Shown here: piece by piece, positions 32,183-52,277 of the stretch
Layout: every line of letters begins with the position of its first letter
How positions within the stretch are numbered: position 1 is the stretch's first letter
IMG/VR virus record: IMGVR_UViG_3300023174_000036
Span: 124,001-188,000 of that record
Direction: 5' to 3' (one strand)
Length of the DNA: 64,000 nucleotides
Position numbers and translations under genes: made by a program
The notes under the pieces: generated by a model
Told to the model about the DNA's origin: nothing
The model's database searches: none
Seen by the model: only the letters and a program-made list of their open reading frames with translations

Positions 32183-32211
32183 ATTATACTTAGGTTTTTT
32201 GATTATGTCAA
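32183..32211 (-). promoter_or_regulatory. perfect sigma70 promoter for clamp-dpdA operon
   Basis: TTGACA-17-TATAAT. Confidence 0.8.
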
Positions 32212-32981
32212 GCATTTTTTCTTACCGTTTCATTGTATTCCGCCGAAGCTTCTAAAATACTAAACGGTGCATTGATAGTTTTGGCATATTTTATAAATGC
32301 TTGAGTGTCTTTAGGAAAACACGCACCACCAAAACCACGTTCCCCATCAAGCCCAGGTACTAAGGTATGACTGGAACCAATTCTTTGATCATGTGTAATC
32401 ATTTGACGCACTATTGAATAGTCTGCACCATTTGCCTCACATATATCAAACAGTTGATTAAAAAAGGCTACTTTTGCCGCTAGGAAAGAGTTTATACTGT
32501 ACTTGGTCATAGCCGCTTCTAATTTAGTACATTGAAAAAACAGTTTACAATTAGGCAATACTGAACTAAAAGTCTCCTGCCAAAATCCTTCAGGATCTTC
32601 ACCGCCAATAATCATAAACTTTTGTTCGGCAAAGTCCTTAGCAGAAGTAGCCGCCCGTAAAAATTCTGGACTATACACAACGGAATGATCTTTATATACA
32701 TCATCGAATGCTTCCAGCGCACTAGGTGTTACAGTGCTTTTAATCATTACCGGCATAAAAATTGGCACTGTATCTAAAATATCAGCGATGTTTCGGACAT
32801 CACATATGCCATCTTCTGTGGTAGGAGTATTCACACAGATAATTAATCCGTCTGCATCTGGATGATCTTTTATTTGTTCTTCGGTATATTTTGGATCAAC
32901 AATTACAATTTCGTGTTTAGTTTGTAATGTTTGTCCAACTGCTTTGCCAACAAATCCGTATCCTGCAATTATAATTTTCAT
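32208..32981 (-). CDS. UDP-glucose/GDP-mannose dehydrogenase family protein (short form)
   Basis: IAGYGFVG, ICVNTP, IKSTV, SPEFL, TKYSINSFLA.K, FGGACFPKD; start moved to MKIII at 32981. Confidence 0.85.
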   Translation of the reverse strand: MKIIIAGYGFVGKAVGQTLQTKHEIVIVDPKYTEEQIKDHPDADGLIICVNTPTTEDGICDVRNIADILDTVPIFMPVMIKSTVTPSALEAFDDVYKDHSVVYSPEFLRAATSAKDFAEQKFMIIGGEDPEGFWQETFSSVLPNCKLFFQCTKLEAAMTKYSINSFLAAKVAFFNQLFDICEANGADYSIVRQMITHDQRIGSSHTLVPGLDGERGFGGACFPKDTQAFIKYAKTINAPFSILEASAEYNETVRKNA

Positions 32982-32982
32982 A

Positions 32983-36093: not shown

Positions 36094-36477
36094 TCAATAT
36101 TTGATACTTTTAATTCTTTCCAATACTGCATCGTCTTGCGCTTTGACTGATTCATCCATTCCTGCTATACCTTTTACAACGCCCTTGCCAAATCGCCATG
36201 CTTTGTCAGCAACATCGCCGATTAGTTCTCCAGTCCCAACCACAACATCTTTAGCCACTTTTCCTGTTTTTTTACCTGCTTCATCCGCAGTTAACTCTGG
36301 CTCTGTTACTTTAGGAGCCTGACCGCTGACAGGTTCGCCGTTAATAGTGGCAACTGTTTTATCTGGATATTTCTCTTTGGCTTTTTTAACTAATAGTTCG
36401 TTGGTATATCTATCATCAGCGTTCCAAACTACAGATGTTTTATCGGTAAATTCAATTGTAAATTTTTTTGTTCCCAC
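36094..36477 (-). CDS. probable internal head protein
   Basis: MDES motif and terminal LERIKSI like neighbours. Confidence 0.5.
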   Translation of the reverse strand: MGTKKFTIEFTDKTSVVWNADDRYTNELLVKKAKEKYPDKTVATINGEPVSGQAPKVTEPELTADEAGKKTGKVAKDVVVGTGELIGDVADKAWRFGKGVVKGIAGMDESVKAQDDAVLERIKSIKY

Positions 36478-36490
36478 GCCAGCCCCTTAT

Positions 36491-38224
36491 TTAATTTTTG
36501 CCAGATCGGTCTGTTAGCCTTGCATGTTTCAATAATTCTGCATTGGTCATCTTGGAGTACTTATCTACCTGTCCAGCATCATACGGAATATTTTCCACTG
36601 TTCCACGTTTAACAAAGGTGCCGTCTTCATCGTAGCCGTCCGGACCATACCATCTTCTATAGTTGTTACCAATGTTTTTCCATCCACCTTTTTCAGTTGA
36701 TGTAACACTTGCGCCTTGATTAGTTTGCCCTAATTTTGCTCTAACCGCCGCTAATCGTTTTTGTATTGCAGGATCTTTGGATTTTGCTAACTCTGCAATA
36801 AGAGCATCAATTTGTGCTTTTAATTTTGCTAACTCTGCGGCTTGTTCTGCTGTAGGTTTATTAGCAACAACAGTTTCTTTGTCTTTTACTTTTCCTGCTT
36901 GATTAACTTCGGCTTTTTTCTCAGCATCAGTCTTTCCTTCAGGACCATTAGCAGTCTTACCATCAGTCTTACCATCAGTCTTACCATCAGTCTTACCATC
37001 AGTCTTACCATCAGTCTTACCATCAGTCTTACCATCAGTCTTACCATCAGTTTTACCATCAGTATTGGCATCTGTACTGTCATCAGTTTTATCATCTGTT
37101 GGGTTGTCTAATACTTCTTCTGGTTCAGGTAATGGTTTATCTCGCATAGCAAGGTATGCGCCGCCAGCAGCCAAAGCTACAGGAATACTGATTAATCCAC
37201 CGACTTTAAGTTTTCTACCTAACCAGCGCCAGAATCCAACTTCTTTTTCAGTGCCTTCAATTCCTTCCCATGCACCTTTATAAGATGGGTCATCTTTTAA
37301 TGTACGCTCTAATTGTTCGCTAGGAGTTTCGTTAGGTTTCTTAGGTAGCAACTCGCCTTCTTTAACTTTTATTGTACCGTCATCGAGTGCTGGCTTAACA
37401 GCATCTTTTTCTTTTGCAATTTCTTTTTTAACAAGTACTTCTTCACCAGTTTTAGGAGCAGTTGGTTCTTCTTTTGGTGATGTTGTAGATTTTGGACGTT
37501 TTGCTAATTCAAGTTCGTATTCTTTTCTTGTTACTGCTGGAATGTCTTTATTTTTTAATGCGGCTTCGAGTTCTTCTCGACTCATGCCTTGAGCTTTTTT
37601 TCTTGCAACTTCTGCACTATCAAATTTATCTTTAGGTGCTTCTGCCGGCGGCGCTGACCCTTTTTTCTTGGCTAGTTCATCAGCAAATGCTTTTCGTTCT
37701 ATTGCAGTGCCTTCTCCGGATGCAATTCTTTTTTCTAATTCAGGAATACTTAATTTTTCAGCTTTTGCAGTTGCTTCAGCGGCAGGGTCTAAGGCAGGGC
37801 CTGTTGGTTCAGCAACTGTTTTGCCAGCATTAGCACTAGTACTTTTTACCACTCTGCCTTCGTTTGCGGCTGTTTCAACTTCAGTTTTGATAACATCAGC
37901 TGTTCTGGTTGTGATTTTTTTGGGTACTTTACCGTTAACGGTTTTAATGGCATACAGTTCAGTTCCAGGCATGTGTTCCCATACTTCGGTAATTTCACGC
38001 TCAGCGAGGACCTTGACGCCCTTATCTACTTTTGGTACCATTTTCACACTAGTAATTTCAACACGCGGCCCTAGTTCTTTTATTAACTCTTTGCCGCTTT
38101 TGCCAATTAGTCTTTTTACAAATTGTTCGCCGGTTTCTCCAACAGCGCCTTCGGTTAGGGTTTTGTTTTCAATACTGTCAAGAATACGTTTAAGTTCTGA
38201 CATGTGTGTAGTTAAATTTGTCAT
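36491..38224 (-). CDS. probable internal head/ejection protein with one TM segment and DGKT repeat
   Basis: N-terminal LKRILDSIE..LTEG; hydrophobic GGLISIPVALAAGGAYLAM; (DGKT)x9. Confidence 0.55.
   Translation of the reverse strand: MTNLTTHMSELKRILDSIENKTLTEGAVGETGEQFVKRLIGKSGKELIKELGPRVEITSVKMVPKVDKGVKVLAEREITEVWEHMPGTELYAIKTVNGKVPKKITTRTADVIKTEVETAANEGRVVKSTSANAGKTVAEPTGPALDPAAEATAKAEKLSIPELEKRIASGEGTAIERKAFADELAKKKGSAPPAEAPKDKFDSAEVARKKAQGMSREELEAALKNKDIPAVTRKEYELELAKRPKSTTSPKEEPTAPKTGEEVLVKKEIAKEKDAVKPALDDGTIKVKEGELLPKKPNETPSEQLERTLKDDPSYKGAWEGIEGTEKEVGFWRWLGRKLKVGGLISIPVALAAGGAYLAMRDKPLPEPEEVLDNPTDDKTDDSTDANTDGKTDGKTDGKTDGKTDGKTDGKTDGKTDGKTDGKTANGPEGKTDAEKKAEVNQAGKVKDKETVVANKPTAEQAAELAKLKAQIDALIAELAKSKDPAIQKRLAAVRAKLGQTNQGASVTSTEKGGWKNIGNNYRRWYGPDGYDEDGTFVKRGTVENIPYDAGQVDKYSKMTNAELLKHARLTDRSGKN
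36952..37059 (-). repeat. 12 bp coding tandem repeat (CAGTCTTACCAT)x9
   Basis: Eight identical units plus one single-mismatch unit; encodes DGKT. Confidence 0.95.
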
Positions 38225-39861
38225 TGTAGGCCTTCCTCTAACCCTGTTTTTTTCCTTGCCCAGTCTATGCCAGGTTGTATAGTGTCCAAGGCCTTATCAA
38301 CCCCTTTACCTATGGCTTTGTATGTATCTGGTAAAAATTCTTTTAATATCAAAGCCGCACCATTGAATCCTGCAGAAATTAAAGCTGAAATTAACAAAGC
38401 CAATTTTGACAAATTACCTGTTAAGCCTTTATAAAATGCATCTGCATGTACTTTAAGTGCGGCGCTTACTGCTTCAGCAGCCTTTGTGGGATTTAATTTT
38501 ACTAATTCCCAATAAGGTTTACCCCAGATTTTTACCATACTTTGAATGCCACGAGCTATTCTAATAATCCATCTAACAAATATTGCACCAGCTCCTGCAT
38601 ATCCAACCACTGCAGAACCACCTGCGGTAAATGGAGCCATAATAGTTCCCACAAGTACAAACCCAGCCGCAATGCCTAAATCTATTCCAAGATCTTTAAA
38701 GCTGTATACTCCGGGTATAATTTCGTCTTCCCAAGACAAAGTGCCTTCGTTCCATATGGCATTAGGGATAGTTGTTACTATATTTTTCTCTTTCCATGTA
38801 CGGCGATCAACTCTGCCAGATTTAGTATCATCTGGATCTCCGTATTTGCTTTGTAAATACGCATCCACATCAAAGTCATCATCGTCTTTTTTAGATTTTG
38901 TATCTTTGGGTTTGTCATACTTAGACGACAAATTCAAATCAGCTTCAGCTTCTAGCAATGAGTAAGGATGATTTTTTCTATAACCAAAACTTTCAATCAG
39001 TTCTGCAATTGAAGTTTTTTTTTGATAACCAAAACTTTCAACTAGTGAAGCGGCTAGGTTAGATTCTTTAACAACACCGGGCACTGCTATTTGTTTTGCG
39101 TTGTCCCATGTAGCTCCAGCATTTGGCGCCACAGTTTGCCCGCCCGTGGCTTTTGTGCCACCCCATGTGGGATCAAATGCATGTGCATTGGCATCATCGC
39201 TATCGTCCATGGGGTCTCTAGTTGAAGTAACTTTTGCGGCCTGATCTTTTTTAGCACCAGTGTTGATATCTTCTTTAAGTTTGAGATACTGATCAACCAA
39301 GCCTTCCAGTTGAGTCATTTTTGCTTCTTCATCTGCTGATGAAACTTTAGCGGCTTGTGCCGCATCAACTGGCGCTGTTGTATTAGCCGCCACATCTGCT
39401 GATTGTTTTTTAACAGCATCAAATTCTTTTTGTGCTCCACCGCTGGATAACCAGTTGGTTAATCCTGCTGGGCCCTTTGCATTTGCAGGGATTAATCCCT
39501 TAGCGGCTAGCGGCTTCCAATCATCTGGACTTGGTGGAACGACCCGAGGATTTTCTCCAGGGTGCATTTCGCTATTAGAACTCCACGTTCTATTTCCGTA
39601 GGCCACAACAAAATCGCCTTCGCTGTTGAATAAGCCTTCAAAATTGTTTTGCTGTGCCAGTTTAGCTAACGCAATGTTACCAGCAACACGAGGATCCCAT
39701 GTGGTAAATCCAGTCCAACCGCCTTTGGCTTTTTCAGCAACAGCTTTGTCCATTGCGGCTTTTTCTACAGCGGCAATGCTTTGCAAGGTAAGAGAACCTT
39801 CTGCTTCATTGATATGATCTAATTTATTAATGAGTTCTCTAAAGTTCATTTCTTTTTCCAA
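38221..39861 (-). CDS. probable internal head/ejection protein with hydrophobic hairpins
   Basis: MNFRELINKLDHINEAE; VKES, LVES, LIES, LLEAE; C-terminal hydrophobic segments. Confidence 0.55.
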   Translation of the reverse strand: MEKEMNFRELINKLDHINEAEGSLTLQSIAAVEKAAMDKAVAEKAKGGWTGFTTWDPRVAGNIALAKLAQQNNFEGLFNSEGDFVVAYGNRTWSSNSEMHPGENPRVVPPSPDDWKPLAAKGLIPANAKGPAGLTNWLSSGGAQKEFDAVKKQSADVAANTTAPVDAAQAAKVSSADEEAKMTQLEGLVDQYLKLKEDINTGAKKDQAAKVTSTRDPMDDSDDANAHAFDPTWGGTKATGGQTVAPNAGATWDNAKQIAVPGVVKESNLAASLVESFGYQKKTSIAELIESFGYRKNHPYSLLEAEADLNLSSKYDKPKDTKSKKDDDDFDVDAYLQSKYGDPDDTKSGRVDRRTWKEKNIVTTIPNAIWNEGTLSWEDEIIPGVYSFKDLGIDLGIAAGFVLVGTIMAPFTAGGSAVVGYAGAGAIFVRWIIRIARGIQSMVKIWGKPYWELVKLNPTKAAEAVSAALKVHADAFYKGLTGNLSKLALLISALISAGFNGAALILKEFLPDTYKAIGKGVDKALDTIQPGIDWARKKTGLEEGLQ

Positions 39862-41232
39862 TTATTTTTTCTTTGTAATACTTGCGCCTTGACCAGACTT
39901 TAAATCATTAGAAATTTCTTTTTCGTCAAATGGTCTTGGTATTGAGCTAACCGCTTTATCCACTGCTTGTCTTGCATTTGCACCTGCTGACACCAAGGTA
40001 TTGGTAACTTTATTTACCACTGAGTTAGCACCTTGCTCTCCAATGTGTGGATTAATACCTTTGCTCTGCACTCCGCCTTTACGACGTTTTGCGGCAAGCT
40101 CACCAATACCATGACGAATTTGTTCTAGATTTTGTTCAAGACCCATGAACATGCCGCCTTTGGCTTTCTTACAAATTTCTTCCCAAGCAAGCAGACTATC
40201 GCTTTCTGCTAGTTCAGCTAATTCTTTTAATTGTGCGCGAGCTTGTGCAATGCGACCTTTCAAGCTCATTGGGTTTGCTTTCTCGTGTCCGTATATGTGC
40301 GGATCATTGGGATCTCCAGTCATTTCAATCGGAGTCTCCGATACTGTTTGTGCAGATTCTTTCATCAGCACTCGTTCAGCAATGGTCTTGGCATATTGAT
40401 TAATCAATGCACGTTTTTCTTCTTTGCGTTGCATAATCTCAGTTTCAGCTTCAACAAAGTATTTGTCAATTAGTCGTTCACGTGGTTGTGGTTTTGTTTT
40501 AGGTTGCTGATAATGTTGCATGGCCATTTGCACTGGCAATGCAACCTTGTGTGGATTAGTGCCTTCACTTAGTATACTAACATCATTTTTATCTACAATA
40601 GATAAGAATTTACTTAGACTGTTTTCTTGGACTGGCGCACCATTAACTTGCGCCATTGCACGACCATATGTGGCTTCTTTATCTTTGTTACCCATAGCGT
40701 ATAAATCTTTATTTGACACAATATTGTTAGCTTCCTCGCCACGGCCCTGCCATGATTTAGATGTTATTCCTTTGGCATCTCGACCCATTGCCATCTTACC
40801 TACACCTAAATCGTATTCAGTATTATGTGATACCACTTTACCTTTAGCATCAACAGTTTGGGTAGTATTCATTGGGCCAGCATTATAATTTTGTGTAGTT
40901 TGATTATTAGTCAAATCAATTGTTTGACTTGCTCCAGTGAATTGAGGTGTAGTGTATTTTATAGCCTTACCTGACTTATCATAGATAAATGTTCCAAACC
41001 CACCAGCATAAGTTTTAGTACCATCTGGATTTGTTGTTAATTTAGATCCATCGCCTTGGTCGCCATCTTGTGCAGGCAGTTGCGGTATGGGAGGAACTTT
41101 GACTGGTTTAACGGCTGGTTGATTAATCTCAGCTTCTTTGACCACACGAAGAAACTTAGACATGCTGTCAGCACCTTCTACAGGCTTTGAAGCAACACCG
41201 TCCATTGCCTGTAAAATTTTCTTCATGTCCAT
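39862..41232 (-). CDS. probable internal head protein
   Basis: MKKILQAMD, repeated SKFL.(V/I)V...E, ILSEG, MKES, VSET. Confidence 0.55.
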   Translation of the reverse strand: MDMKKILQAMDGVASKPVEGADSMSKFLRVVKEAEINQPAVKPVKVPPIPQLPAQDGDQGDGSKLTTNPDGTKTYAGGFGTFIYDKSGKAIKYTTPQFTGASQTIDLTNNQTTQNYNAGPMNTTQTVDAKGKVVSHNTEYDLGVGKMAMGRDAKGITSKSWQGRGEEANNIVSNKDLYAMGNKDKEATYGRAMAQVNGAPVQENSLSKFLSIVDKNDVSILSEGTNPHKVALPVQMAMQHYQQPKTKPQPRERLIDKYFVEAETEIMQRKEEKRALINQYAKTIAERVLMKESAQTVSETPIEMTGDPNDPHIYGHEKANPMSLKGRIAQARAQLKELAELAESDSLLAWEEICKKAKGGMFMGLEQNLEQIRHGIGELAAKRRKGGVQSKGINPHIGEQGANSVVNKVTNTLVSAGANARQAVDKAVSSIPRPFDEKEISNDLKSGQGASITKKK

Positions 41233-41236
41233 GCTA

Positions 41237-42148
41237 TTAACCTTTTAATACTCTGCTGGTTATATCTTTAATGCGAGTTAATTCTGAATTTTCTTTTAAA
41301 CTTCTAAACTGTGCAGTACCGCCGGGCATTATTGGCCCGCCATGCAAGTTGTCGCGTTCTTGTCCTGCTTTGTTGTACCACTTACCATCTTGACCTTTTG
41401 TCAGTGGTTCTCCAGTTTGATAATCTTTAGGAACAAATGGCGCAGATGGAGCAGGTTCTGGCTCGCGTTGTCTAGGTTCGCGGACATTCCATCCTGCGGC
41501 TTTCATTGCGGCAAGTGTTTGCTTTCCTGGCATTCCGGCAGTTGCTTTGCCATTTTCAATCTTGATATGTGAACCAAACCCAATGGTATGGATATTGTCT
41601 GTTAATTCAAGCCAATATATTTTACCTTGTGTATCAAATACAGTAGGATAATTCTGCCCATCATAGTTAGTTGTTGTTAAAGTAAATCCATTTCCTAAAT
41701 CCTGATCAGCACCTTCTTCTAAACCAATAGCACCTTTAATTTTATCTACTATGCTTGGCTTTTGCATACTTGGCGGTAAGCAATTGTTTGGTAATGTCTT
41801 AACAACACTTGGATTTCTCGCCATCCATTCTTTAGCAGGTAACACAGGAATGTAATTTCCTTTAGAATCTAACGGTGCTCCGTTTCCGGCACCAGGTTCC
41901 CCAGCCATAGCTTCTGCACTGCGAAGATTTTCAATACGCCATTTAATTTGATTTCTTTCCCACGGCTCACGGGCACGTGATAACAAATCATTAAGTTGCC
42001 TAAATTGTGGATTTTTATTGTTATAGTCTTTATCAGCTTGATCAGCTTCTGCACGATCGTCCCCAGGCCATCCAGGCTGACCATTTAGCTCAGATAATCG
42101 AGTATTATACTCAAAAATAAATCCTGGTTCAACATCAGTTATACGCAT
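41237..42148 (-). CDS. probable internal head protein
   Basis: MRITDV, LEEG, terminal LKENSELTRIKDIT. Confidence 0.55.
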   Translation of the reverse strand: MRITDVEPGFIFEYNTRLSELNGQPGWPGDDRAEADQADKDYNNKNPQFRQLNDLLSRAREPWERNQIKWRIENLRSAEAMAGEPGAGNGAPLDSKGNYIPVLPAKEWMARNPSVVKTLPNNCLPPSMQKPSIVDKIKGAIGLEEGADQDLGNGFTLTTTNYDGQNYPTVFDTQGKIYWLELTDNIHTIGFGSHIKIENGKATAGMPGKQTLAAMKAAGWNVREPRQREPEPAPSAPFVPKDYQTGEPLTKGQDGKWYNKAGQERDNLHGGPIMPGGTAQFRSLKENSELTRIKDITSRVLKG

Positions 42149-42152
42149 ACTA

Positions 42153-43958
42153 TTAACCGTTCAAACGTGTCAAGAATTGTTTCATGCGATCTAAGTCCGC
42201 TGATTCTTTAACAGGGTATGTTTTTCCATCCACTTTGAATTCAGTCTTGCCAGCTTTTCTAGCCGCGTCTAATTCTCCTGAAAATTCGTTACCCTCATCA
42301 GCCACATCATTGCCTTTGGTAGGTTTGTCTTTTTTCTGAACAGCTGATTTTTCGGCAATGTATGCTTGTGTTTCTTTAATGTTCTTCCACATAGCGGCAG
42401 CGGCAATCTTTTCACCTTTCTCACCACCACCAGCAGCCTTGGCCACTTTGTCAAAACTCTTACCTGGCTTGCCAATGTCTTTGCCTGCTTTAGCATCTTT
42501 AACTACAGCTGACTTCTTAGCCTTGCTTAGACCTGCACTTGGTTTGGCGGCCTCTGGTAAATTTGGACGAGGATGAGTGCCTTGTGCTGATTTGATACTG
42601 CCTTTTAAACTACTGACGTGATTTCTACTTGGCATGCCTTTGCGTTTGCCGTGTGTGTTCATCGAACCAGCACCGCCGCGGCCGTATCCTTTGACTAGTG
42701 GATCATTGTGGTCAAATTCGCCACCGCCCTTTAGATTCTTTTCGCCCGGATAGTCATCTGGTTTTGGACCATTGTAATAATCATCATCATGATAATCATA
42801 CTGGTCATAATCACGCGGCTCTTGAGTATACAATTTGTCTTTGTGTTTAGGATCACGCCACTTGGCAGCTTCTTTAACTGTCTTGCCGCCTTTTTCATCT
42901 TTACCAAGACGTCCGGCAATAACATCACCGCGTGTTACTTTGTCGTATGGTTTGGCATTGTTGGCCAAGTTGCCATCGCCTTTCTTTTTAGCTTCGTAAA
43001 CGCCTGTGCCATAAGTTTCGTCAACTTCTTTGGCTTTCTTTGGTTTAGCAGGAGCACCATCTCTGTTGTCAAACTTCTCGCTGTCCTTCATGCCCCAAGT
43101 CTTGGCACTCTTTGGACTTTGCTTTTGTGCTGGAGCTCGCTTTGCTTTCTCTTCAGCTGATTGTGCTTTGGCATGACTTGCTTTGCCTTTGCCTGATTTA
43201 GCCATCGAATCCAGCTCGTCGCCGTCATCTTTGTAGCTGGTATTTTTATGAATTACACCTGTGTCAGTTTTAGTTAATTCGCCAGTGGCTGTTTTCTTTG
43301 TGGAACCCACTTTGGCATTTGCATCAAAATCTTCGTCCACTTCTTCGTCGTCTGGAATACCATTGTGGTTACGGTCAAGACGTTTGCTGGCAGCATGGAA
43401 CGCTTTGGCTTGACGATTGTATTTTTCAACTTTTGATTTAACATGATCTGGAATTGCTTTAGGCTCTTCGTAAACCATTCCACTGCCGCCACATTCTGTA
43501 CATTCACGATGTCCACCACTCAAAATACCTTCGGCAATTTTGTCGTCGGCATCGGCTTTGATTTTTTCTGCGTGTACTTTCTTAAGCTCTTTAACTTTAG
43601 ATTTAGCCTCCATCAGGCGATTATTAATAATACGCTTTTGGCTTTCGGTATAAACTTCGCTGTCTTCAAGAGCTTTGCCATACTGGCTAAACTTCATTTC
43701 ATATTCAAGATAATGGTAAACGGATGCAATATAGTCAGCGGCTTTGGTAATCTTGGCTTGCACCCAGGCTTCCATCTGATCTTCATCATTAATCTGTTTA
43801 AACAGCTTGTGTGAATAGTTTGCAATCTTGTATAAATCAGCTTTGGCCATTGCACCTTCGCGATCGGACTGTCCGGGCTGTAATCCAATTACATTTTCCG
43901 CGTCTTGCGACATGATTTCTGGCTCTGCTGGTCCCATTGGGTTCATTTGATCTGACAT
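42153..43958 (-). CDS. probable internal head protein, Lys/Asp-rich
   Basis: Late promoter at 43983..43989; IAEG, VDED, VDET, VKEA, LPEA, terminal VKESADLDRMK. Confidence 0.6.
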   Translation of the reverse strand: MSDQMNPMGPAEPEIMSQDAENVIGLQPGQSDREGAMAKADLYKIANYSHKLFKQINDEDQMEAWVQAKITKAADYIASVYHYLEYEMKFSQYGKALEDSEVYTESQKRIINNRLMEAKSKVKELKKVHAEKIKADADDKIAEGILSGGHRECTECGGSGMVYEEPKAIPDHVKSKVEKYNRQAKAFHAASKRLDRNHNGIPDDEEVDEDFDANAKVGSTKKTATGELTKTDTGVIHKNTSYKDDGDELDSMAKSGKGKASHAKAQSAEEKAKRAPAQKQSPKSAKTWGMKDSEKFDNRDGAPAKPKKAKEVDETYGTGVYEAKKKGDGNLANNAKPYDKVTRGDVIAGRLGKDEKGGKTVKEAAKWRDPKHKDKLYTQEPRDYDQYDYHDDDYYNGPKPDDYPGEKNLKGGGEFDHNDPLVKGYGRGGAGSMNTHGKRKGMPSRNHVSSLKGSIKSAQGTHPRPNLPEAAKPSAGLSKAKKSAVVKDAKAGKDIGKPGKSFDKVAKAAGGGEKGEKIAAAAMWKNIKETQAYIAEKSAVQKKDKPTKGNDVADEGNEFSGELDAARKAGKTEFKVDGKTYPVKESADLDRMKQFLTRLNG

Positions 43959-43985
43959 ATTTGTAACTCCGTTAACTTGTAATAT

Positions 43986-44588
43986 TTATCTTTTGACGCT
44001 GCCGCCGCCCAATAGGTTGGCACCCTTCATATCAAGGGCATTTTTAGCAGTACCATCTTTGTTCTTAGGCTGTTTTACTGGTTTGTTCTTGTATACTGCA
44101 CCAACGCCCACATTGGCCGCAGTAGTCATGTTTCCAGGTGCGCTGGCGAATTCTTTTAGGGTTTCACTGACCGGAGCGCCAGTTTCGTGTACTGAAGCTT
44201 TTTTACCTTTGTTTTGCAAACTTCTAGCCACAGCTTCTGCGTGTGATTTGCTACCAAACACCTTCCAAGTTTTACCATCTATTGCAACTGCGTAATTGTT
44301 AGTTTCATGGCCTAATTCGTGTTCCATCTCACGACGTTTGAATTCACGTTTTTCGCGATCCCCAAATCCAGTACGATTGTCATCGTAGTTACGATAGCTT
44401 TCAGCCACACTTTCCTTCTTGGCAGTTTTGGCCGCATCTTTCCATGCTTGTGCTGTGGGCGCTTTAGGACTATCAGCATCTCTACTAGTGCCTGCTTTTT
44501 TACGTTTGTTCACATAGTAGTATAGTCCTTTCTTTTCACTTTCTACTATATCTTTTTTAACACTTTCATCTAATTCATGCATTTTCAT
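43986..44588 (-). CDS. probable internal head protein
   Basis: MKMHELDES, IVES, VAES, VSET, LKE. Confidence 0.55.
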   Translation of the reverse strand: MKMHELDESVKKDIVESEKKGLYYYVNKRKKAGTSRDADSPKAPTAQAWKDAAKTAKKESVAESYRNYDDNRTGFGDREKREFKRREMEHELGHETNNYAVAIDGKTWKVFGSKSHAEAVARSLQNKGKKASVHETGAPVSETLKEFASAPGNMTTAANVGVGAVYKNKPVKQPKNKDGTAKNALDMKGANLLGGGSVKR

Positions 44589-44896
44589 AATTTTTTCTCC
44601 CCAGTCATGTATGGTAAACTAAACCATAATTTGAACCATTCAGGAGTTCCTGGTTTAATATTGTTTTTGCGCTGTATCTCACCGTTGTTATCGCCGGTTA
44701 CACTGATGTTGCTGCCTAAGCTAGCACGATACTCGTGTAGTCTTGCTTCACCACCTAGACCACCTAGACCAGCCAGTGCTTTTAATTCGTGTATAGGATC
44801 ATTGGGATCGAGATAACAATCGTCATCTGCACTTTGATTCAAATCCTGTGTAGTGATCCTATATTGTTTCATTTTAAACTTGCTCTTAACATCCAA
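44585..44896 (-). CDS. hypothetical protein
   Basis: Ends PGTPEWFKLWFSLPYMTG. Confidence 0.6.
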   Translation of the reverse strand: MDVKSKFKMKQYRITTQDLNQSADDDCYLDPNDPIHELKALAGLGGLGGEARLHEYRASLGSNISVTGDNNGEIQRKNNIKPGTPEWFKLWFSLPYMTGEKKL

Positions 44897-45306
44897 CTGT
44901 GTTTCTTATGCGCATCCTGACGATCTGCAAAGAAGTTACTTAGTCCGTGATCACCAGCATCTTCGGCCATGGCAAACACTATCTTGAACATGTTGGCCAT
45001 TTTATCACTATCAGCTAACAGTTCGCGTAACATACTTTGAAAATCTGGAACTGAGTTCTCATCTTCAATCTTGCTCAGCATACTAAATTTGCTGTAACTA
45101 GCAGGCGCATAAATTTGCAAAGCACGTAGTTCTTCTGCAAATTTATCAACTACTCCATACACTTCGTCATATATTCTTTCAAACAACAAATGATGCTGAT
45201 AAAACAACGGCCCTTCGGTATTCCAGTGAAAGTTTTGCGCCTTTAATGCAAATGAATATTCGCTGGCAAATGCTGTTTTTAATGCTAAATGATATTTTTC
45301 GTCCAC
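44869..45306 (-). CDS. dps: Dps/ferritin-like DNA-protection protein
   Basis: KAQNFHWNTEG..FY..H.LFE.IY....D.FAE.LR, HKKHSWML. Confidence 0.9.
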   Translation of the reverse strand: MDEKYHLALKTAFASEYSFALKAQNFHWNTEGPLFYQHHLLFERIYDEVYGVVDKFAEELRALQIYAPASYSKFSMLSKIEDENSVPDFQSMLRELLADSDKMANMFKIVFAMAEDAGDHGLSNFFADRQDAHKKHSWMLRASLK

Positions 45307-45307
45307 T

Positions 45308-46411
45308 TTAAACTCCGTATTTGTTTCGTTTAGGTTTTGCTACAGGACTGACTTTATGAGTAGAATCCAATTCTCGACTCTTCATATCGCCTTTATTTGT
45401 ATCCTTGTAACTAGCACCAACAACCTTATATGCTTGTTTAAGCATGTCTTGTTCTTCTTGTGTATAAGGATGAGTTGTTTTTTGTTTACCAATCCAGCTC
45501 TTGGCCTTCATCTCAATAGGGTCTTTGCCGTTAGCACCAGCCACGGCCATGCCTAATCGATATGCGGTGTAATCACCGCTAACATGCTCGCTATCACCGT
45601 AAGTATTAACACCTCTAGTGGGCTGTTGTTGTCGCTTGGTCATTTTAGCCTGCGATGACTCTAGCATTGCAGTCATTTCTCTAATTTGTTCTGCTAGTTG
45701 AAATGCACGAAGATTTTTCTTTGGTGTATTCTTGTTTACGTCAACTGTGGTGTTTTGTTTTGTAATAATACCAACACCTGCGGCATCTTCTTTGGCTTTA
45801 ACTGCTTTTTTAACTTTTTCTGGATACTGATTTAAATAATATGCAACCACATCAAATATAGGTTTTGCTTCACCATCAACTTCGACGGTCACACTAGGAT
45901 CAATGCCCATGTCTTTATAGAACGCATTACGGTCACCGGTTCTTACAGCCTTACGCAAATCCGTTGCACTTGCCAATCGTTCTGTTGCAACATGCTCAAT
46001 ATTTTTAAATTTATACATACCATGTTCGCTTTCAGCGCCATTGTATTTGACCAATACGTCAGCTAACCATGTTTCATCGGTATATACTTTCAAATGTACA
46101 TTTTCACCATACTTGTCGTAAACACTGGTGGCTAATGTTAGCAAACTTTGTTCAGGAACAACATGACCTGCAACTGGCGGAAATACTGCGGCCATGCATT
46201 GTAATTTAACATCATAGGGTAATGGATCTTTAGGGCCGCTAGTGCTGTCGTTAGTTCCTACATACCAAATTGGATTTTTGCTGGCTGCTTTCCATACACC
46301 TTTGTGACCTTTGTGCGGAGGATTAAAGCGTCCAAATGAAATCCCAATAGTCTTTATACTATTAGTTGGTTGCTCACCTTCAAACATTTCTCTTAACTTC
46401 ATGGTACCCAC
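45308..46411 (-). CDS. cytidyltransferase-like (HIGH) domain fused to head-protein-like C-terminal domain
   Basis: SFGRFNPPHKGH, DPL, ASAT.LR. Confidence 0.7.
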   Translation of the reverse strand: MGTMKLREMFEGEQPTNSIKTIGISFGRFNPPHKGHKGVWKAASKNPIWYVGTNDSTSGPKDPLPYDVKLQCMAAVFPPVAGHVVPEQSLLTLATSVYDKYGENVHLKVYTDETWLADVLVKYNGAESEHGMYKFKNIEHVATERLASATDLRKAVRTGDRNAFYKDMGIDPSVTVEVDGEAKPIFDVVAYYLNQYPEKVKKAVKAKEDAAGVGIITKQNTTVDVNKNTPKKNLRAFQLAEQIREMTAMLESSQAKMTKRQQQPTRGVNTYGDSEHVSGDYTAYRLGMAVAGANGKDPIEMKAKSWIGKQKTTHPYTQEEQDMLKQAYKVVGASYKDTNKGDMKSRELDSTHKVSPVAKPKRNKYGV

Positions 46412-47613
46412 CTTGATAATGTTTCCCCGCTACCGTGTTGAACGTTATCTCGTGGAACAAATTTAGTATGCATATCACCTGCTGAATCGTACTGTACCCA
46501 TCCTTCTGAATTGATAACTTTAATTTCTGGAGGATTCATTTCTAATTGCGATAACAGTTGATTTTTCAAATTCATAATTCGCTTAACATAATTAAACACA
46601 GTAGTAACGCCAGCCGGAACAGCATCTATACGGGATCTAATATTCAACTTCATGCTGTCGGATTTGACCATACCACTTGCACCTGTATCAACCCAAGTTA
46701 TAAAATCATCACCAACATTGGCCAACTGTCCTGATTTGGATTTTTCATTCATGTAACGATATATAATACCTTTGAAGTTTGATACTTTTGGAATAGGTGA
46801 CAAGAACGCATCAATAGTTGCTTTATCTTGTTTGAGATCCATTTCAATTTTATCAATAACTTTGGTATCCATTTTTGGTTGTACTTTGGCATAGTATGGA
46901 CTCAATACAATTAACTCAGGTATTGGATTCATATATGTAGTAAAATCTCTAACTGGTTTTTGTTCACTATCACCAGCACCAAATTTATCAAAGCTACCGT
47001 GTGCGGCAACCATGGCCTGTGCACCTTCCGCAATACGCTGACCCAGTGTAGAGTCGACAGCAATGTGATATTGTGTTTGACTTTTTAAATTAGGATTTAA
47101 TTCATACACACCATCCACTTCTTCTGGGGGTGTTGTAAATAGACCATCGGCATAAAAATAAATTTCTTTACCTTTACGTGGAACTTTGGTAGAAGCTTTG
47201 AAAATCTCATACAAGTGACTAAACTCTGTGGCAAACTGTTGGCGCTCTGCTTGTTTGGCAGGATCGTTGCCAGCATCACCGCTTTTGTTCAAAATAAAAT
47301 TATAAATGCCACGCACACTGGTAAAATCGCTTATATCGCTAGTGCCTGTTCCACCGCGACTCCAACCGTTGTGACCGCATAAGATAAACTGTCCGTCTTT
47401 AGTGTAGCCCCAATAAATTTGCGGTGCTCCGTCCCATTTAAATCTGGTATTTTCTGAACTAGCAGTTCCAGCTTTACGTATATGCTCAAGAGCTTTGATT
47501 ACACCAGCAGTGCCGTGTAAAAAAGTCAAATCTTCTACGTGGTTAAATGCTCTGCCAACTTTTGCTTTGACAGGTTCAACAGCCTCACGTATAAACAATT
47601 CTCTTAGTAACAC
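46399..47613 (-). CDS. conserved phage protein with ligase-like KxDG motif (DUF6267-like)
   Basis: NHVEDL, FKWDGAPQIYWG, YADGLF, terminal EGWV...KFVPR. Confidence 0.55.
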   Translation of the reverse strand: MLLRELFIREAVEPVKAKVGRAFNHVEDLTFLHGTAGVIKALEHIRKAGTASSENTRFKWDGAPQIYWGYTKDGQFILCGHNGWSRGGTGTSDISDFTSVRGIYNFILNKSGDAGNDPAKQAERQQFATEFSHLYEIFKASTKVPRKGKEIYFYADGLFTTPPEEVDGVYELNPNLKSQTQYHIAVDSTLGQRIAEGAQAMVAAHGSFDKFGAGDSEQKPVRDFTTYMNPIPELIVLSPYYAKVQPKMDTKVIDKIEMDLKQDKATIDAFLSPIPKVSNFKGIIYRYMNEKSKSGQLANVGDDFITWVDTGASGMVKSDSMKLNIRSRIDAVPAGVTTVFNYVKRIMNLKNQLLSQLEMNPPEIKVINSEGWVQYDSAGDMHTKFVPRDNVQHGSGETLSRWVP

Positions 47614-47615
47614 AA

Positions 47616-48008
47616 TTAGTCCTTGTACTTGCCATCAGCTAGATGTTGTTTAAAGTCTTCTTGCATTTTTTTGCAAATACTAGTAACAGTTTTGTCGTCT
47701 AACGATTCAGGCAGTTCACGTATAGGGAATCGTTTAACATATTGCTGATAGCTACTTACAACTGCTGGCTTAAAAACATCAGGATTTATTGAACGATTGC
47801 TGTTGGCCCTATCAAGGCAGCGGGCAATGCTGGGATAAACATGACGTCGATACACATCATCGTCATGATTCATGAAATGAGTCAAGTCTTCTACAAGGTC
47901 ATAGTCCAGTTCTCTACCCTTTTCAGTAGATTTAACAAAATCTAAATCTTTAAAGAATTTATTTTCTAATAGTTCACGTATACGCATTATAAAGCCCGGT
48001 TTTAACAA
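47616..48008 (-). CDS. hypothetical late protein
   Basis: MRIRELLE; late promoter ATAAATA at 48046..48052. Confidence 0.6.
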   Translation of the reverse strand: MLKPGFIMRIRELLENKFFKDLDFVKSTEKGRELDYDLVEDLTHFMNHDDDVYRRHVYPSIARCLDRANSNRSINPDVFKPAVVSSYQQYVKRFPIRELPESLDDKTVTSICKKMQEDFKQHLADGKYKD

Positions 48009-48071
48009 AAATTACATACATGGCGGCAGATGCTCGCCTTTAGAGTATTTATCGTAAAACACAATTACTGT

Positions 48072-48719
48072 TTAGGCTTTCTCGTTTACGACCCGCTCAA
48101 CTTTGGAAATTACGCCGCTAAGATGCATCTTTGCCATGAGCAAATTATTATCACCTGTAATGTAAAAGTAACTGCCGCCCCAGCTATTGTTTCTTAACAG
48201 CTGAATTTTACAAGATTTAGTTAGTTTTATCTTGGAATTATTACTAGCCCATGTGATAAAAGTGCTGTATTCTTGCGAAGTTTTGCCCAGTGTTACCCTG
48301 TAATCGTATTTTATCTTGGGCAAAATAACTGTGTTTTCTTCTAGAGTTGTGCCGGTTGCCGGCTTGCAAATATACTTTACTCGAGATGCATCCAATTTGA
48401 TTAATTTGTCAACATCTTGTTTGTTATTAGTATACACTGTGACCCATGGAGTTTCTACACGTATTTCTATGTTGTCTAACGCAGAAAGCACATGCTCTAA
48501 CTTGATAGCATATTGCAACTCTTCTTCAGTTTTGATAGTCCAACGTTTTCTAGAATACACATCAGTTTCTAATTTTACATTTTTTATGCGGTCAGCAATA
48601 ACATCGCTGGGTGCGTTTCTAAATAAATGAGCGCCAGAAAATACCAATACAATTTTGTACTGGTACTTTCCGTAAAACAGTTTTTTAGTCTGCTTGAACT
48701 GCATGGTCAGTAGTTTCAA
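48072..48719 (-). CDS. hypothetical protein
   Basis: 215 aa ORF overlapping clpA end. Confidence 0.6.
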   Translation of the reverse strand: MKLLTMQFKQTKKLFYGKYQYKIVLVFSGAHLFRNAPSDVIADRIKNVKLETDVYSRKRWTIKTEEELQYAIKLEHVLSALDNIEIRVETPWVTVYTNNKQDVDKLIKLDASRVKYICKPATGTTLEENTVILPKIKYDYRVTLGKTSQEYSTFITWASNNSKIKLTKSCKIQLLRNNSWGGSYFYITGDNNLLMAKMHLSGVISKVERVVNEKA

Positions 48720-50961: not shown

Positions 50962-51448
50962 TTAATTTCCTCTGTTTTTTAATTGCCATTGCTAGTTTAA
51001 GTGGACTTAGTCCATCTGTAAAACATACGCCATCCAAATGATCTAGTTCGTGTAAGAAACATCTGGCATCTAGACCCTCTAATTGTATTATACGCTCTTG
51101 GCCTGTATTGTCAAGGTATTTTGCAATCAAACTTGTACTGCGTTCAACTTTTAACCATAAATCCGGAAAACTCAAACATCCTTCGTCTCCTATGGCTTTT
51201 TCATTATTTACTTCAAGGATAATGGGATTAAACAGCCCACACTCTCGACCATCCTGAGTACGCATGACAAATACACGTTTCAACAATCCAACTTGTTGTG
51301 CGGCAAGTCCTATACCGTTTGATATCTTCATTAAACTAAGCATCTCTTGCTCGACACGTGCCGCTTGTTCACAATCTTCTGCACTTTCAAATTGCCAAGG
51401 CGTTGCTGATTGTTTTAATATTGGATTAGGATGTTTTATTAATTTCAT
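50945..51448 (-). CDS. def: peptide deformylase
   Basis: [23 protein letters not shown]. Confidence 0.95.
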
Positions 51449-52277
51449 TGTTAATTGAGCGAAGTCTTTCTACTAACGAAGGATCTGTAACGGCCGGAGT
51501 TCGGATTTTAATAACAGATACAAAACGACCTTTGTGCCCAGTGTTTACATTTGGAAATCCATTACCGTGACTGGCAAATTCTGAACCGTCTTCAATACCA
51601 GCACGTAAATCAAGATCCAATGCTTGTCCTGACAATGTTTTTACTTGTTTTCTACAACCAACCATAGCGTCAATGGGACTAATGTACACTTTTGTGTAAA
51701 TGTCATCGCCCACACGGGTAAAGTTAGCATCGGGCAATATCACAATAGTAACATTTAAATTACCACGGGGTGCATTTGGAATACTGTCGTCACCAAGTCC
51801 TTGATATCTGATAGTTTCAGCATGTCCAATACCAGGCGGCACATTAATAACAACAGTTTGTGTACGTCCACTAGGCAATTTATAATTTGCTTCTAGTTGT
51901 TTGCCTACAAACGAATCCATTAACGTAATTTGACATTGGATATTTAAATCTCTATTTCGGCCACGGCCACCGTGTCTGCCAAAAATATCTCCAAACGGAT
52001 GTCCAGCAAATGGATTGTTTTGCCCAAATGCTTGTTCAAACGGATCCCAACCACCAGTATGAAAACGTACTTGTGGGCCACCCATTCTTTGTTGGTCGTA
52101 TTCAGCACGTTTATTTTGATCACTTAGTGTGTCGTATGCCACACTAATATCTTTAAACTTGGCTTGATCACCGCCTTTGTCCGGGTGATGCTTATTGGCC
52201 AAACTTCTGTAGGCTTTTTTAATTTCTTCAGGAGTTGCTTGTTCATTAACTCCAAGGGTTTGATAATAATCAGTCAT
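51426..52277 (-). CDS. DnaJ/CbpA-like co-chaperone (no Zn finger)
   Basis: [16 protein letters not shown]-domain, G/F linker, C-terminal DnaJ domains; late promoter at 52297..52303. Confidence 0.9.

What the first reader, a model, noticed from the sequence alone, without database searches (positions are those of the whole stretch)
36094..48008. 12 kb array of unrelated ORFs sharing putative capsid-targeting and prohead-protease signatures
Many ORFs start with M-x-(I/L/M)-x-E/D-(L/I/M/V) or an amphipathic LKRILDSIE / LINKLDHINE / KKILQAMD helix. They contain repeated hydrophobic-x-E sites (LTEG, VKES, IAEG, LEEG, MDES, VSET), and several end in E(S/N)xxLxR(I/M)K. T4-family prohead proteases cut after Glu in such motifs. 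Inference: a large set of processed internal head proteins injected with the DNA, most of unknown function.
Basis: partly seen in the sequence, partly recalled or inferred. Interest (0 to 1): 0.6.

Follow-up and report, generated by a model that had tools for sequence, protein, structure and literature searches.

The report
Candidate packaged-protein gene array, jumbo phage
A 12-gene block in an uncultured 356-kb T4-related phage encodes unrelated proteins that share short, portable end-peptides resembling the tags T4 uses to load proteins into its head, so it is probably a large set of head-packaged cargo proteins, though no virion data exist.

Summary
Window 36094-48008 carries 12 tightly packed minus-strand genes with no detectable similarity to one another. 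Six start with M-x-hydrophobic-x-E/D-hydrophobic. Genome-wide this leader occurs on 23 of 382 genes, against 5.8±2.3 by chance. Hydrophobic-x-Glu sites are enriched about 1.5-2-fold over local shuffles; hydrophobic-x-Asp sites are not. Two proteins end in the exact C-terminal motif and a third loosely.

The genome encodes a T4-type head module: gp23 capsid protein, gp20 portal and gp21-family protease. In relatives the end-peptides stay nearly invariant while the protein bodies change in length and sequence. The same tail sits on different bodies. A T4-late-promoter-like motif precedes the first gene.

Two cargoes have recognisable folds: an NMN-adenylyltransferase-like enzyme and a ligase-like nucleotidyltransferase (DUF6267). 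Cyanophage homologues of the first carry T4-form leaders, and one is reported in a virion proteome.

The capsid-targeting reading is therefore the best explanation (about 0.6), but it rests on inference. No virion data exist for this phage. The leader is one residue out of register with T4's, and a strict T4-derived score fails. The Dps-like and 95-aa genes show no signal. I rate it a new variant of a known kind.

The parts
48046..48053 (-). T4-late-promoter-like element (GATAAATA) in the 63-nt gap upstream of the first gene of the array
   Evidence: N[AC]TAAATA occurs upstream of 52 genes against 2.7 expected. It precedes large structural operons, including the head operon. The sequence was read.
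47616..47987 (-). 123-aa protein with leader MRIRELLE|N (longest ORF extends to 48008)
   Evidence: Relatives' ORFs start at this Met. It ranks 3rd of 322 for hydrophobic-x-Glu excess.
46399..47613 (-). 404-aa DUF6267 protein: leader, disordered linker, then a ligase-like nucleotidyltransferase body
   Evidence: Pfam DUF6267, E=1e-13. In 117 of 119 homologues a hydrophobic-x-E site ends at residue 8-10, followed by a variable linker. K59-x-D61-G62 is invariant. AF2 pLDDT is 87.5, with a low-confidence helix at 2-10 and disorder at 13-17. The top structural matches are RNA/DNA ligases, Z 6-7.
45308..46402 (-). 364-aa protein: leader MKLREMFE|G, NMN/NaMN-adenylyltransferase-like domain (about residues 15-195), low-confidence C-terminal half
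   Evidence: PHROG cytidyltransferase, E=1e-14; TIGR00125. Foldseek matches NMNAT/NadD/NadM at E=2.5e-5 to 1e-4. The leader is invariant, with a 0- or 48-aa insert before the catalytic motif. It is homologous to virion-detected S-CREM2 gp154 (PMC10665884).
44869..45306 (-). 145-aa Dps/ferritin-like protein with no leader or tail
   Evidence: Pfam Ferritin, E=3.9e-20; NCBIfam Dps-type matches below cut-off.
44585..44872 (-). 95-aa protein (103 aa from the upstream TTG) with no leader or tail; conserved C-terminal W-rich motif
43986..44588 (-). 200-aa Lys-rich basic protein with leader MKMHELDE|S and a conserved C-terminus
   Evidence: It ranks 4th for hydrophobic-x-Glu excess. Relatives are 150-265 aa.
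42153..43958 (-). 601-aa Lys-rich, low-hydrophobicity protein with the C-terminal tail preceded by V-K-E|S; residues 320-366 are a module shared with cyanophage proteins
   Evidence: The tail is kept in a distant relative (L028), while bodies range from 417 to 601 aa.
41237..42148 (-). 303-aa protein with both the leader (MRITDVE) and the C-terminal tail preceded by L-K-E|N
   Evidence: The family has 36 proteins of 166-508 aa, with the tail on different bodies.
39862..41232 (-). 456-aa basic protein with a conserved N-terminal amphipathic helix variant; the body is highly length-variable
   Evidence: relatives 218-713 aa.
38221..39849 (-). 542-aa protein with a long leader ending I-N-E|A and a C-terminal third holding two or more hydrophobic, membrane-like helices
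   Evidence: Relatives start at this Met. TM-like segments lie at 386-404 and 483-501.
36491..38224 (-). 577-aa Lys-rich protein with an N-terminal helix variant followed by L-T-E|G, one TM-like segment and a (TDGK)n repeat
36952..37063 (.). 12-nt tandem repeat, 9.3 copies, encoding the TDGK repeats inside the 577-aa gene
   Evidence: The near-identical relative L022 is 16 aa shorter.
36094..36477 (-). 127-aa protein with a looser C-terminal tail preceded by M-D-E|S

Best explanation
What the locus is. It is a late-transcribed operon of cargo genes for the phage head. Most of its products carry one or both of two short address peptides. One is an N-terminal leader of about 8-15 residues: M-x-hydrophobic-x-E/D-hydrophobic-hydrophobic, ending in hydrophobic-x-Glu. 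The other is a C-terminal amphipathic basic tail of about 15 residues, preceded by Glu-Ser or Glu-Asn.

Proposed mechanism, by analogy with T4. The address peptides bind the assembling scaffold core or shell, so the cargo is co-assembled into the prohead. The gp21-family protease then cuts after Glu. This removes the address peptides and may also cut the long disordered Lys-rich bodies. The matured cargo stays with the DNA and leaves with it at infection.

Proposed cargo classes:
- Lys-rich disordered basic proteins, likely DNA-associated (577, 601, 200 and 456 aa).
- Proteins with membrane-like helices, possible ejection or conduit proteins (546 and 577 aa).
- Two enzymes that would act at time zero: an NMNAT-like adenylyltransferase and a ligase-like nucleotidyltransferase.

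Shown: the motifs, their enrichment, their portability and conservation, the T4-type head module, the folds of two cargoes, and virion detection of a homologous family in cyanophages.

Inferred: binding to the core, cleavage, packaging, injection and function.
For: - Head module. The genome has a T4-type head module: Peptidase_S77 (E=6.5e-27), gp23 (4e-99) and gp20 (6e-108).
- Leader frequency. The leader occurs on 23 of 382 genes against 5.8±2.3 expected. Six are in the array (p=3e-5). Conservation is at protein level.
- Resemblance to T4. The leader has the same form as T4 gp24, Alt and the internal-protein N-termini, read from the T4 record.
- Conservation. Flanking PolB and DsbA are 98-100% identical in relatives. 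Array proteins diverge to 40-87% identity with large length changes, yet keep their termini.
- DUF6267 leader. It is kept down to 40% identity, with a variable linker after it. AF2 places it outside the fold. The same holds for the 367-aa family.
- Tail portability. The tail sits on different bodies and on further genes in this genome.
- Hydrophobic-x-Glu excess. It is specific to Glu. The genome-wide ranking is headed by the scaffold, with the protease 6th, and 5 of 12 array proteins fall in the top 25 (p=0.001).
- Late expression. A late-promoter-like motif lies upstream of the first gene.
- Virion evidence in relatives. Cytidylyltransferase/NMNAT-like proteins are detected in cyanomyovirus virions (PMC10665884). 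S-CREM2 gp154 matches the 367-aa protein (E=2e-6). It and other cyanophage homologues start with T4-form leaders.
- T4 literature. Internal proteins are diverse with only the targeting sequence conserved (PMC3012670). T4 also has C-terminal propeptides, in gp21 and Alt (PMC9026906).
- Gene location. T4's own internal-protein and alt genes also lie outside the head module.
Against: - There is no virion proteome or N-terminal data for this phage or any close relative.
- The leader is one residue shorter before the first Glu than the T4 sequence. A fixed-register score built from T4 peptides does not enrich the array (Mann-Whitney p=0.80).
- P3 of the Glu-Ser site before some tails is Thr or Pro rather than hydrophobic.
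- The regex has false positives, for example a heme oxygenase whose N-terminus belongs to its fold.
- The array sits among replication and chaperone genes on the same strand as PolB.
- The S-SCSM2R virion proteome (23 proteins) did not name its NMNAT homologue. The S-CREM2 authors themselves caution about carry-over in CsCl preparations.
- The Dps-like and 95-aa genes lack signals.
- The late-promoter-like motif lies 59 nt from the ATG, further than the usual 25-38 nt.
Confidence: 0.6

Rival explanations
1. The proteins are prohead-core or filler components, scaffold-like or 'inner body'-like. They are packaged and then degraded or retained for DNA organisation, rather than being injected effectors. 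The address peptides work as in the main explanation, but the role is structural.
For: Four of the proteins are Lys-rich, low in hydrophobic residues and probably disordered. Their hydrophobic-x-Glu density resembles that of the scaffold. Their rapid length change suggests weak constraint on the bodies. The tail resembles the scaffold's own C-terminus.
Against: Two members are folded enzymes. One family is found in mature cyanophage virions (PMC10665884). In T4, basic internal proteins are injected (PMC3012670).
Confidence: 0.15
2. The end-peptides are recognition tags for another machine, not the prohead. One candidate is the phage's own ClpA-type unfoldase encoded next door, acting with ClpP, DnaK and DnaJ elsewhere in the genome. 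The array would then be a set of non-virion proteins whose stability or folding is controlled through these tags.
For: A ClpA/B-like ATPase lies immediately upstream (48685-50961), with DnaJ and peptide deformylase beside it. ClpP lies at genome 225633-226175. The Clp-to-PolB synteny with the array in between is conserved across the lineage. Clp unfoldases are known to read short terminal tags (own knowledge).
Against: Atu_ph07 has the same DnaJ-Clp block but no such leaders. The leaders resemble T4 head-targeting peptides, and the Glu-specific site excess is shared with the scaffold and the prohead protease. Cyanophage homologues carry T4-form leaders and are virion-associated (PMC10665884). 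Leader genes also occur far from Clp.
Confidence: 0.1
3. The shared termini are a by-product of composition, translation-initiation preferences or chance, and the genes are ordinary unrelated accessory genes.
For: Short amphipathic motifs are common. The regex has some false positives. Three starts had to be reassigned.
Against: The excess over column shuffles is fourfold, and internal Met contexts show the pattern at only 1.3%. Codons in the leader vary. The motifs are conserved to 40% identity while the linkers vary. The tails are portable. The enrichment is specific to Glu and absent for Asp.
Confidence: 0.03

Closest known systems
T4 internal proteins IPI/IPII/IPIII and Alt with the capsid targeting sequence (CTS), processed by gp21
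   Same: A short N-terminal peptide sits on otherwise unrelated proteins and ends in hydrophobic-x-Glu. The genome encodes a gp21-family protease. The genes lie outside the head module. The cargo is basic and Lys-rich, with an enzyme among it (Alt). C-terminal propeptides exist in T4 for gp21 and Alt (PMC9026906, PMC3012670).
   Different: The first Glu is at residue 5, not 6, and a strict T4-register score fails. There are twelve contiguous genes plus two further loci, about 23 leader genes in all, rather than a handful. Cargo reaches 601 aa. The recurrent portable C-terminal tail and the membrane-like helices have no described T4 counterpart that I know of.
Processed head, inner-body and ejection proteins of giant phages phiKZ, 201phi2-1 and SPN3US
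   Same: Many head proteins (about 19 in 201phi2-1) are cut after Glu by a gp21-related protease. Propeptides hold several redundant sites. Enzymes are packaged and ejected (PMC9026906, PMC5694885, PMC7411985).
   Different: The lineage and head module differ: here gp23 and gp20 are clearly T4-type. No sequence similarity to those proteins was seen in the family scans. Their cleavage motif is reported as small-x-Glu.
Virion-associated cytidylyltransferase/NMNAT-like proteins of T4-like cyanophages (for example S-CREM2 gp154)
   Same: They are homologous to the 367-aa protein over its catalytic domain (E=2e-6). The architecture is the same: leader, variable linker, then adenylyltransferase domain. 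They are detected in virion proteomes (PMC10665884).
   Different: The cyanophage leaders have the T4 register (MK-S/N-F-x-x-F-x-x-E-A), while this lineage uses its own variant. The cyanophage papers I read do not mention a targeting peptide.
Scaffold C-terminal shell-binding peptides and encapsulin cargo-loading peptides (works-like only; own knowledge)
   Same: A short C-terminal amphipathic peptide is proposed to dock cargo to the inside of an HK97-fold shell. The tail variant ending -IAGLR resembles this phage's scaffold C-terminus, which ends -RRLAGLKI.
   Different: No binding was shown. The scaffold ranks only 10th of about 380 with a low score. Encapsulin peptides are not removed by a protease.

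Membership tests
T4-type CTS-bearing, gp21-processed head cargo | Genome encodes a gp21-family prohead protease together with T4-type capsid and portal proteins | tested here: met
   Peptidase_S77 E=6.5e-27; Gp23 4e-99 and Portal_T4 6e-108.
T4-type CTS-bearing, gp21-processed head cargo | Short N-terminal peptide ending in a hydrophobic-x-Glu site, shared by otherwise unrelated proteins | tested here: met
   Present in 6 of 12 array genes and 23 of 382 genome-wide against 5.8±2.3 expected. The bodies are unrelated. In 117 of 119 DUF6267 homologues the Glu lies at residue 8-10.
T4-type CTS-bearing, gp21-processed head cargo | Sequence match to the T4 CTS itself, in the same register | tested here: not met
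   A fixed-register score built from T4 IPI, IPIII, Alt and gp24 gives array ranks no better than the rest of the proteome (p=0.80). The motif is shifted by one residue.
T4-type CTS-bearing, gp21-processed head cargo | Leader is separable from the mature protein (linker, not part of the fold) and conserved while the body diverges | tested here: met
   AF2 models place the leader outside the fold. Inserts after the leader vary in length. Termini are more conserved than interiors.
T4-type CTS-bearing, gp21-processed head cargo | Late expression together with head genes | tested here: inconclusive
   One late-promoter-like motif lies upstream of the first gene, but further from the start codon than usual. 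There are no expression data.
T4-type CTS-bearing, gp21-processed head cargo | Physical presence in virions with the leader removed after Glu | not testable with these tools
   The virus is uncultured. The only indirect support is virion detection of the homologous cytidylyltransferase family in cyanophages (PMC10665884).
NMN/NaMN adenylyltransferase-like nucleotidyltransferases (367-aa protein) | Rossmann-type fold with the (H/T)xGH motif | tested here: met
   The motif P-P-H-K-G-H is invariant in the family. Foldseek matches NadD/NadM/NMNAT at E=2.5e-5 to 1e-4 over residues about 15-195. PHROG cytidyltransferase E=1e-14. Substrate and activity were not tested, and phosphopantetheine adenylyltransferases score almost as well.
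Covalent nucleotidyltransferases (ATP-dependent RNA/DNA ligases): 404-aa DUF6267 protein | Motif I Lys in K-x-D-G, and the ligase adenylyltransferase fold | tested here: inconclusive
   K59-W-D61-G62 is invariant in 36 sequences. The top 25 VIA-align hits are almost all RNA/DNA ligases, but at Z 5-7 and rmsd about 4 Å. Foldseek E is only 0.04. The sequence profile finds no solved ligase.
Dps/ferritin-like (145-aa protein) | Ferritin-like four-helix domain | tested here: met
   Pfam Ferritin E=3.9e-20. Dps equivalog models score below their cut-offs.

The most novel reading that the evidence does not exclude
This lineage uses a modular, two-ended capsid-addressing code: an N-terminal leader and a scaffold-mimicking C-terminal tail, each followed or preceded by a Glu cleavage site. 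The code lets it load more than 20 different proteins into the head. They include a ready-made NAD-salvage-type adenylyltransferase and a ligase-like enzyme that would act against host defences before any phage gene is expressed, and membrane-inserting proteins that help DNA entry.
Probability: 0.3. Interest if true: 0.75.

Novelty: new variant of a known kind. Interest (0 to 1): 0.6.

Why it matters
If correct, the locus extends the T4 capsid-targeting principle in three ways. It shows a divergent leader in an uncultured aquatic jumbo-phage lineage. It adds a portable C-terminal tail. It enlarges the cargo set to include enzymes and membrane-like proteins.

It also offers an explanation for why cytidylyltransferase/NMNAT-like enzymes keep turning up in cyanophage virion proteomes: they carry a T4-form leader. 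The papers I read do not remark on this.

In practice, the leader and tail could serve as sequence markers to predict packaged or injected proteins, which are candidate anti-defence factors, in metagenomic T4-like genomes. They could also serve as tags for loading foreign proteins into such capsids.

Tried and rejected
- Megablast of the 12-kb region against 50,697 phage records gave no match. tblastn of the 404- and 200-aa proteins also gave none.
- PHROGs and Pfam gave nothing for seven of the proteins.
- The fixed-register T4 CTS score gave no enrichment.
- The syntenic Clp-to-PolB block of the nearest cultured relative with virion data, Atu_ph07, has different genes and no leaders, so its proteome cannot be transferred.
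- A literature search for DUF6267, DUF6321 and DUF3008 found no papers. The supplements of Sullivan 2010 did not hold the 'GC0119' cluster tag.
- The S-SCSM2R virion proteome text does not list its NMNAT homologue.
- The ESM Atlas feature search for the 542-aa protein returned only unnamed viral clusters below 0.9.
- Complex prediction of the scaffold protein with residues 1-40 of the 542-aa protein returned 'no answer' (score 0.00). This is not evidence either way.
- Sigma-70-type promoter and terminator scans were at background.
- No second gp23-like (gp24-type vertex) gene was found, so its N-terminus could not be compared.
- A graph clustering of N-termini at a loose threshold collapsed into one giant component and was useful only through its high-degree nodes.

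Full report
**Context.** The window is bases 124001-188000 of a 356,312-bp IMG/VR virus record estimated 96% complete. Its B-family DNA polymerase is closest to those of Sinorhizobium phage Phosso (49% identity), Agrobacterium phage Atu_ph07 (46%), Pectobacterium phage CBB and the 121Q-like E. coli jumbo phages (43%). The DNA has no near relative among 50,697 deposited phage genomes. About 40 kb upstream of the window the genome carries a T4-type head module. It holds a gp23 major capsid protein (Pfam E=4e-99), a gp20 portal (6e-108), a gp21-family prohead protease (Peptidase_S77, E=6.5e-27), a coiled-coil scaffold-like protein and an acidic core-like protein. The capsid protein's N-terminal region aligns in form with the T4 gp23 propeptide and ends at L-L-E|S.

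**The genes.** Twelve minus-strand genes fill 36094-48008 with gaps of 27 nt or less or short overlaps. DsbA-like and PolB genes lie downstream. A 215-aa gene, a ClpA/B-like ATPase, peptide deformylase and DnaJ lie upstream. All-vs-all BLASTP finds no real similarity among the twelve. Seven have no Pfam or PHROG hit.

**Check of the N-terminal pattern.** Three starts were moved a few codons inward, to where relatives' ORFs begin.
- After that, six of the twelve start with M-x-hydrophobic-x-E/D-hydrophobic.
- In my own crude call of 382 genes, the pattern ^M.[AILMFV].[ED][LIFMV] occurs 23 times. Column shuffles give 5.8±2.3 (maximum 18 of 5000).
- Only 1.3% of internal Met residues sit in this context, against 6.0% of N-termini.
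- Six of the 23 are in this array (p=3e-5). Ten more lie at genome 308-335 kb (p=8e-6).
- Codons inside the leader differ freely, with three Arg codons and five Leu codons. The constraint is therefore on the protein.

**Check of the Glu sites.**
- Hydrophobic-x-Glu occurs 81 times in the array proteins, against 55.8±6.2 in shuffles confined to 15-residue blocks (0 of 500 reach the observed count).
- With a small residue after the Glu, the count is 31 against 15.1±3.8.
- Observed/expected is 1.45-2.05 in the array and 1.10-1.16 in the rest of the proteome.
- The same test with Asp gives 0.89.
- Ranking all 322 proteins of 100 aa or more by this excess puts the scaffold first and the prohead protease sixth. 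Array proteins rank 3rd, 4th, 8th, 17th and 22nd (5 of 12 in the top 25, p=0.001).

**Check of the C-terminal motif.** The exact form is present in only two proteins (303 and 601 aa), and nowhere else in the proteome. The 127-aa protein has a looser version.

**Comparative evidence.** Related IMG/VR and metagenome contigs keep the order Clp, 215-like, 123-like, DUF6267, adenylyltransferase-like, then further genes, then DsbA and PolB.
- PolB and DsbA are 98-100% identical in the closer relatives. The array proteins fall to 40-87% identity and change length greatly: the 303-aa family spans 162-310 aa, the 456-aa family 218-713 aa and the 601-aa family 417-601 aa.
- Their first roughly 15 and last roughly 20 residues stay nearly constant.
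- In 119 DUF6267-family proteins, down to 40% identity, the leader consensus is kept. In 117 of them a hydrophobic-x-Glu site ends at residue 8-10. A variable linker of 7-15 residues follows, and in one case a whole inserted module.
- In the 367-aa family the leader is invariant and is followed by either nothing or a 48-residue insert before the catalytic motif.
- AlphaFold models place both leaders as low-confidence helices outside the folded domains.
- The tail is portable. Among 36 relatives of the 303-aa protein (166-508 aa) it occurs on bodies with quite different N-termini. It has two variants, one ending -VLKG and one ending -IAGLR. A Glu-Ser or Glu-Asn lies 2-4 residues upstream in almost all of them.
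- The -IAGLR variant also ends two other proteins of this genome. They lie at genome 24105-26798 and 310032-310838, and the latter also carries a leader. A position-specific scoring matrix (PSSM) built from the tails ranks the acidic core protein, the scaffold (which ends -RRLAGLKI) and the protease 8th, 10th and 12th of about 380, though with low scores.

**Expression signal.** The octamer N[AC]TAAATA is the T4 late-promoter core with a relaxed first base. It occurs 128 times in the genome and lies in the upstream intergenic region of 52 genes, against 2.7 expected. It usually sits 25-38 nt before the start codon. It precedes the head operon and many very large structural-type genes. One copy lies at 48046-48053 in the 63-nt gap before the first gene of the array. 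The rest of the array has no comparable gaps, so a single late transcript is plausible but not shown.

**What the cargoes are.**
- *367-aa protein.* It has a confidently modelled domain (residues about 15-195, pLDDT 85-89). This domain matches NMN/NaMN adenylyltransferases (Foldseek E=2.5e-5 to 1e-4), and phosphopantetheine adenylyltransferases almost as well. PHROG and TIGRFAM hits agree.
- *404-aa protein.* The model has mean pLDDT 87.5. Its best structural matches are RNA and DNA ligases (Z 6-7, about 180 residues, rmsd about 4 Å). K-x-D-G is invariant in the family. I read it as a ligase-like nucleotidyltransferase with moderate confidence.
- *145-aa protein.* It is Dps/ferritin-like.
- *577-, 601- and 200-aa proteins.* They have 14-15% Lys and only 21% hydrophobic residues, below the 5th percentile of the proteome. 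The 456-aa protein is also basic and low in hydrophobic residues (26%).
- *546- and 577-aa proteins.* They contain membrane-like hydrophobic helices.
- *601-aa protein, residues 320-366.* This is a module found at 70-80% identity in about 170 cyanophage genomes.

**Link to known biology.** Read from the T4 record, IPII and IPIII begin MKTYQEFIAE|A, gp24 begins MAKINELLRE|S and Alt begins MELITELFDE.
- Reviews state that the first ten residues of IPIII suffice for head targeting. Residues 4 and 7 matter for targeting, and residues 8 and 10 for processing.
- T-even internal proteins are diverse, with only the targeting sequence conserved.
- gp21 and Alt also lose C-terminal propeptides (PMC9026906, PMC3012670).
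- The leaders here have the same build but place the first Glu at residue 5 instead of 6. Accordingly, a fixed-register score derived from the T4 peptides does not enrich the array (p=0.80). I therefore treat this as 'works like' rather than as sequence membership.
- T4's own internal-protein and alt genes also lie outside its head module.

**Independent support from cyanophages.** The 367-aa protein is homologous to the 'cytidyltransferase' conserved in T4-like cyanophages (150 records).
- Those proteins begin with T4-form leaders: MKSFFQFLSE|A in S-SM2, MKSFTSFFTE|A in P-TIM68, MKSFSKFFSE|A in S-SCSM2R and MKNFSSFLTE|A in S-CREM2. A Lys/Glu/Ala-rich linker and then the catalytic domain follow.
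- S-CREM2 gp154 is annotated as a virion protein. The S-CREM2 paper reports cytidylyltransferase/NMNAT-like proteins in the virion proteomes of four cyanomyoviruses, while cautioning that carry-over is possible (PMC10665884).
- A homologous enzyme thus carries a lineage-matched leader in two branches of the T4 superfamily. This is what a detachable head-address peptide predicts.

**Alternatives.**
- *Tags read by the neighbouring Clp-type unfoldase.* The genome also has ClpP, a DnaK-like gene and DnaJ. This cannot be excluded. However, Atu_ph07 has the same DnaJ-Clp block without leaders, and this reading does not explain the Glu-site pattern shared with the scaffold and protease.
- *A purely structural, degraded-filler role.* This is possible for the Lys-rich members.
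- *Chance or composition.* The shuffles, the codon diversity and the conservation across 40%-identity homologues argue strongly against it.

**Limits.** Gene calls and starts are my own. The regex has false positives, for example a heme oxygenase. The structural matches for DUF6267 are middling. The complex prediction gave no answer. No step shows binding, cleavage, packaging or injection.

**Verdict.** The capsid-targeting interpretation is the best available, at about 0.6. It represents a new variant of the T4 and giant-phage theme of protease-processed head cargo.

Noticed in passing
window 48685-52277 (-); genome C1:225633-226175 and about 291497-293425: The phage carries a chaperone/protease set. 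In the window it comprises a ClpA/B-like two-AAA ATPase (758 aa), peptide deformylase (50945-51448) and DnaJ (51426-52277). Elsewhere there is a ClpP (E=5.6e-78) and a gene starting like DnaK. The DnaJ-Clp pair is also present in Atu_ph07.
   Followed up: partly
genome-wide; example at window 48046-48053 (-): The octamer N[AC]TAAATA lies upstream of 52 genes against 2.7 expected, typically 25-38 nt before the start codon. It looks like a T4-type late promoter with a relaxed first base. Exact TATAAATA occurs only 15 times, 13 of them within 80 nt upstream of a gene.
   Followed up: partly
genome C1:22800-30357 and C1:308307-334703 (outside the window; loci L005, L007, L033, L044): There are two further clusters of leader- and/or tail-bearing genes. 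They include a HAD-phosphatase-like protein, a DUF6321 protein, a LysM plus phage-lysozyme protein, a GH19-like protein and an 897-aa protein ending in the -IAGLR tail. A 399-aa leader gene (89082-90281) sits beside the head operon behind an exact TATAAATA.
   Followed up: partly
L023:4981-5778; P0118; genome C1:328084-328785; cyanophage loci L035, L036: Short Cys- and Lys-rich modules recur as inserts in otherwise different proteins of this lineage. Examples are W-S-x-K-Y-K-x-S-I-N-C...H-C-x-G-K-K, C-W-K-G-Y...V-P-N-C-V-P, and DUF6321. They also occur in a cyanophage protein annotated 'structural protein'.
   Followed up: partly
window 36952-37063: A 12-nt tandem repeat (9.3 copies, 99% matches) encodes TDGK repeats in the 577-aa protein. 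A relative that is otherwise 97% identical is 16 residues shorter, which suggests variation in repeat copy number.
   Followed up: no
L015:11203-12306: In one relative (a 94-kb contig) the adenylyltransferase-like gene is split into two ORFs of 114 and 236 aa. This may be a frameshift or an assembly error.
   Followed up: no
window 53257-53814 (-), 52290-52967 (-), 32208-33053 (-): The neighbours include a 3-TM holin-like protein (GTA_holin_3TM), a 2OG-Fe(II) oxygenase and a UDP-glucose/GDP-mannose dehydrogenase-like protein. A heme-oxygenase-like gene lies at genome 290114-290656.
   Followed up: no
window 45308-46402 C-terminal part; genome C1:334320-334703: The C-terminal 87 residues of the 367-aa protein are homologous (E=4e-11) to a separate 127-aa leader-bearing protein. 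This is another case of module sharing among leader genes.
   Followed up: no
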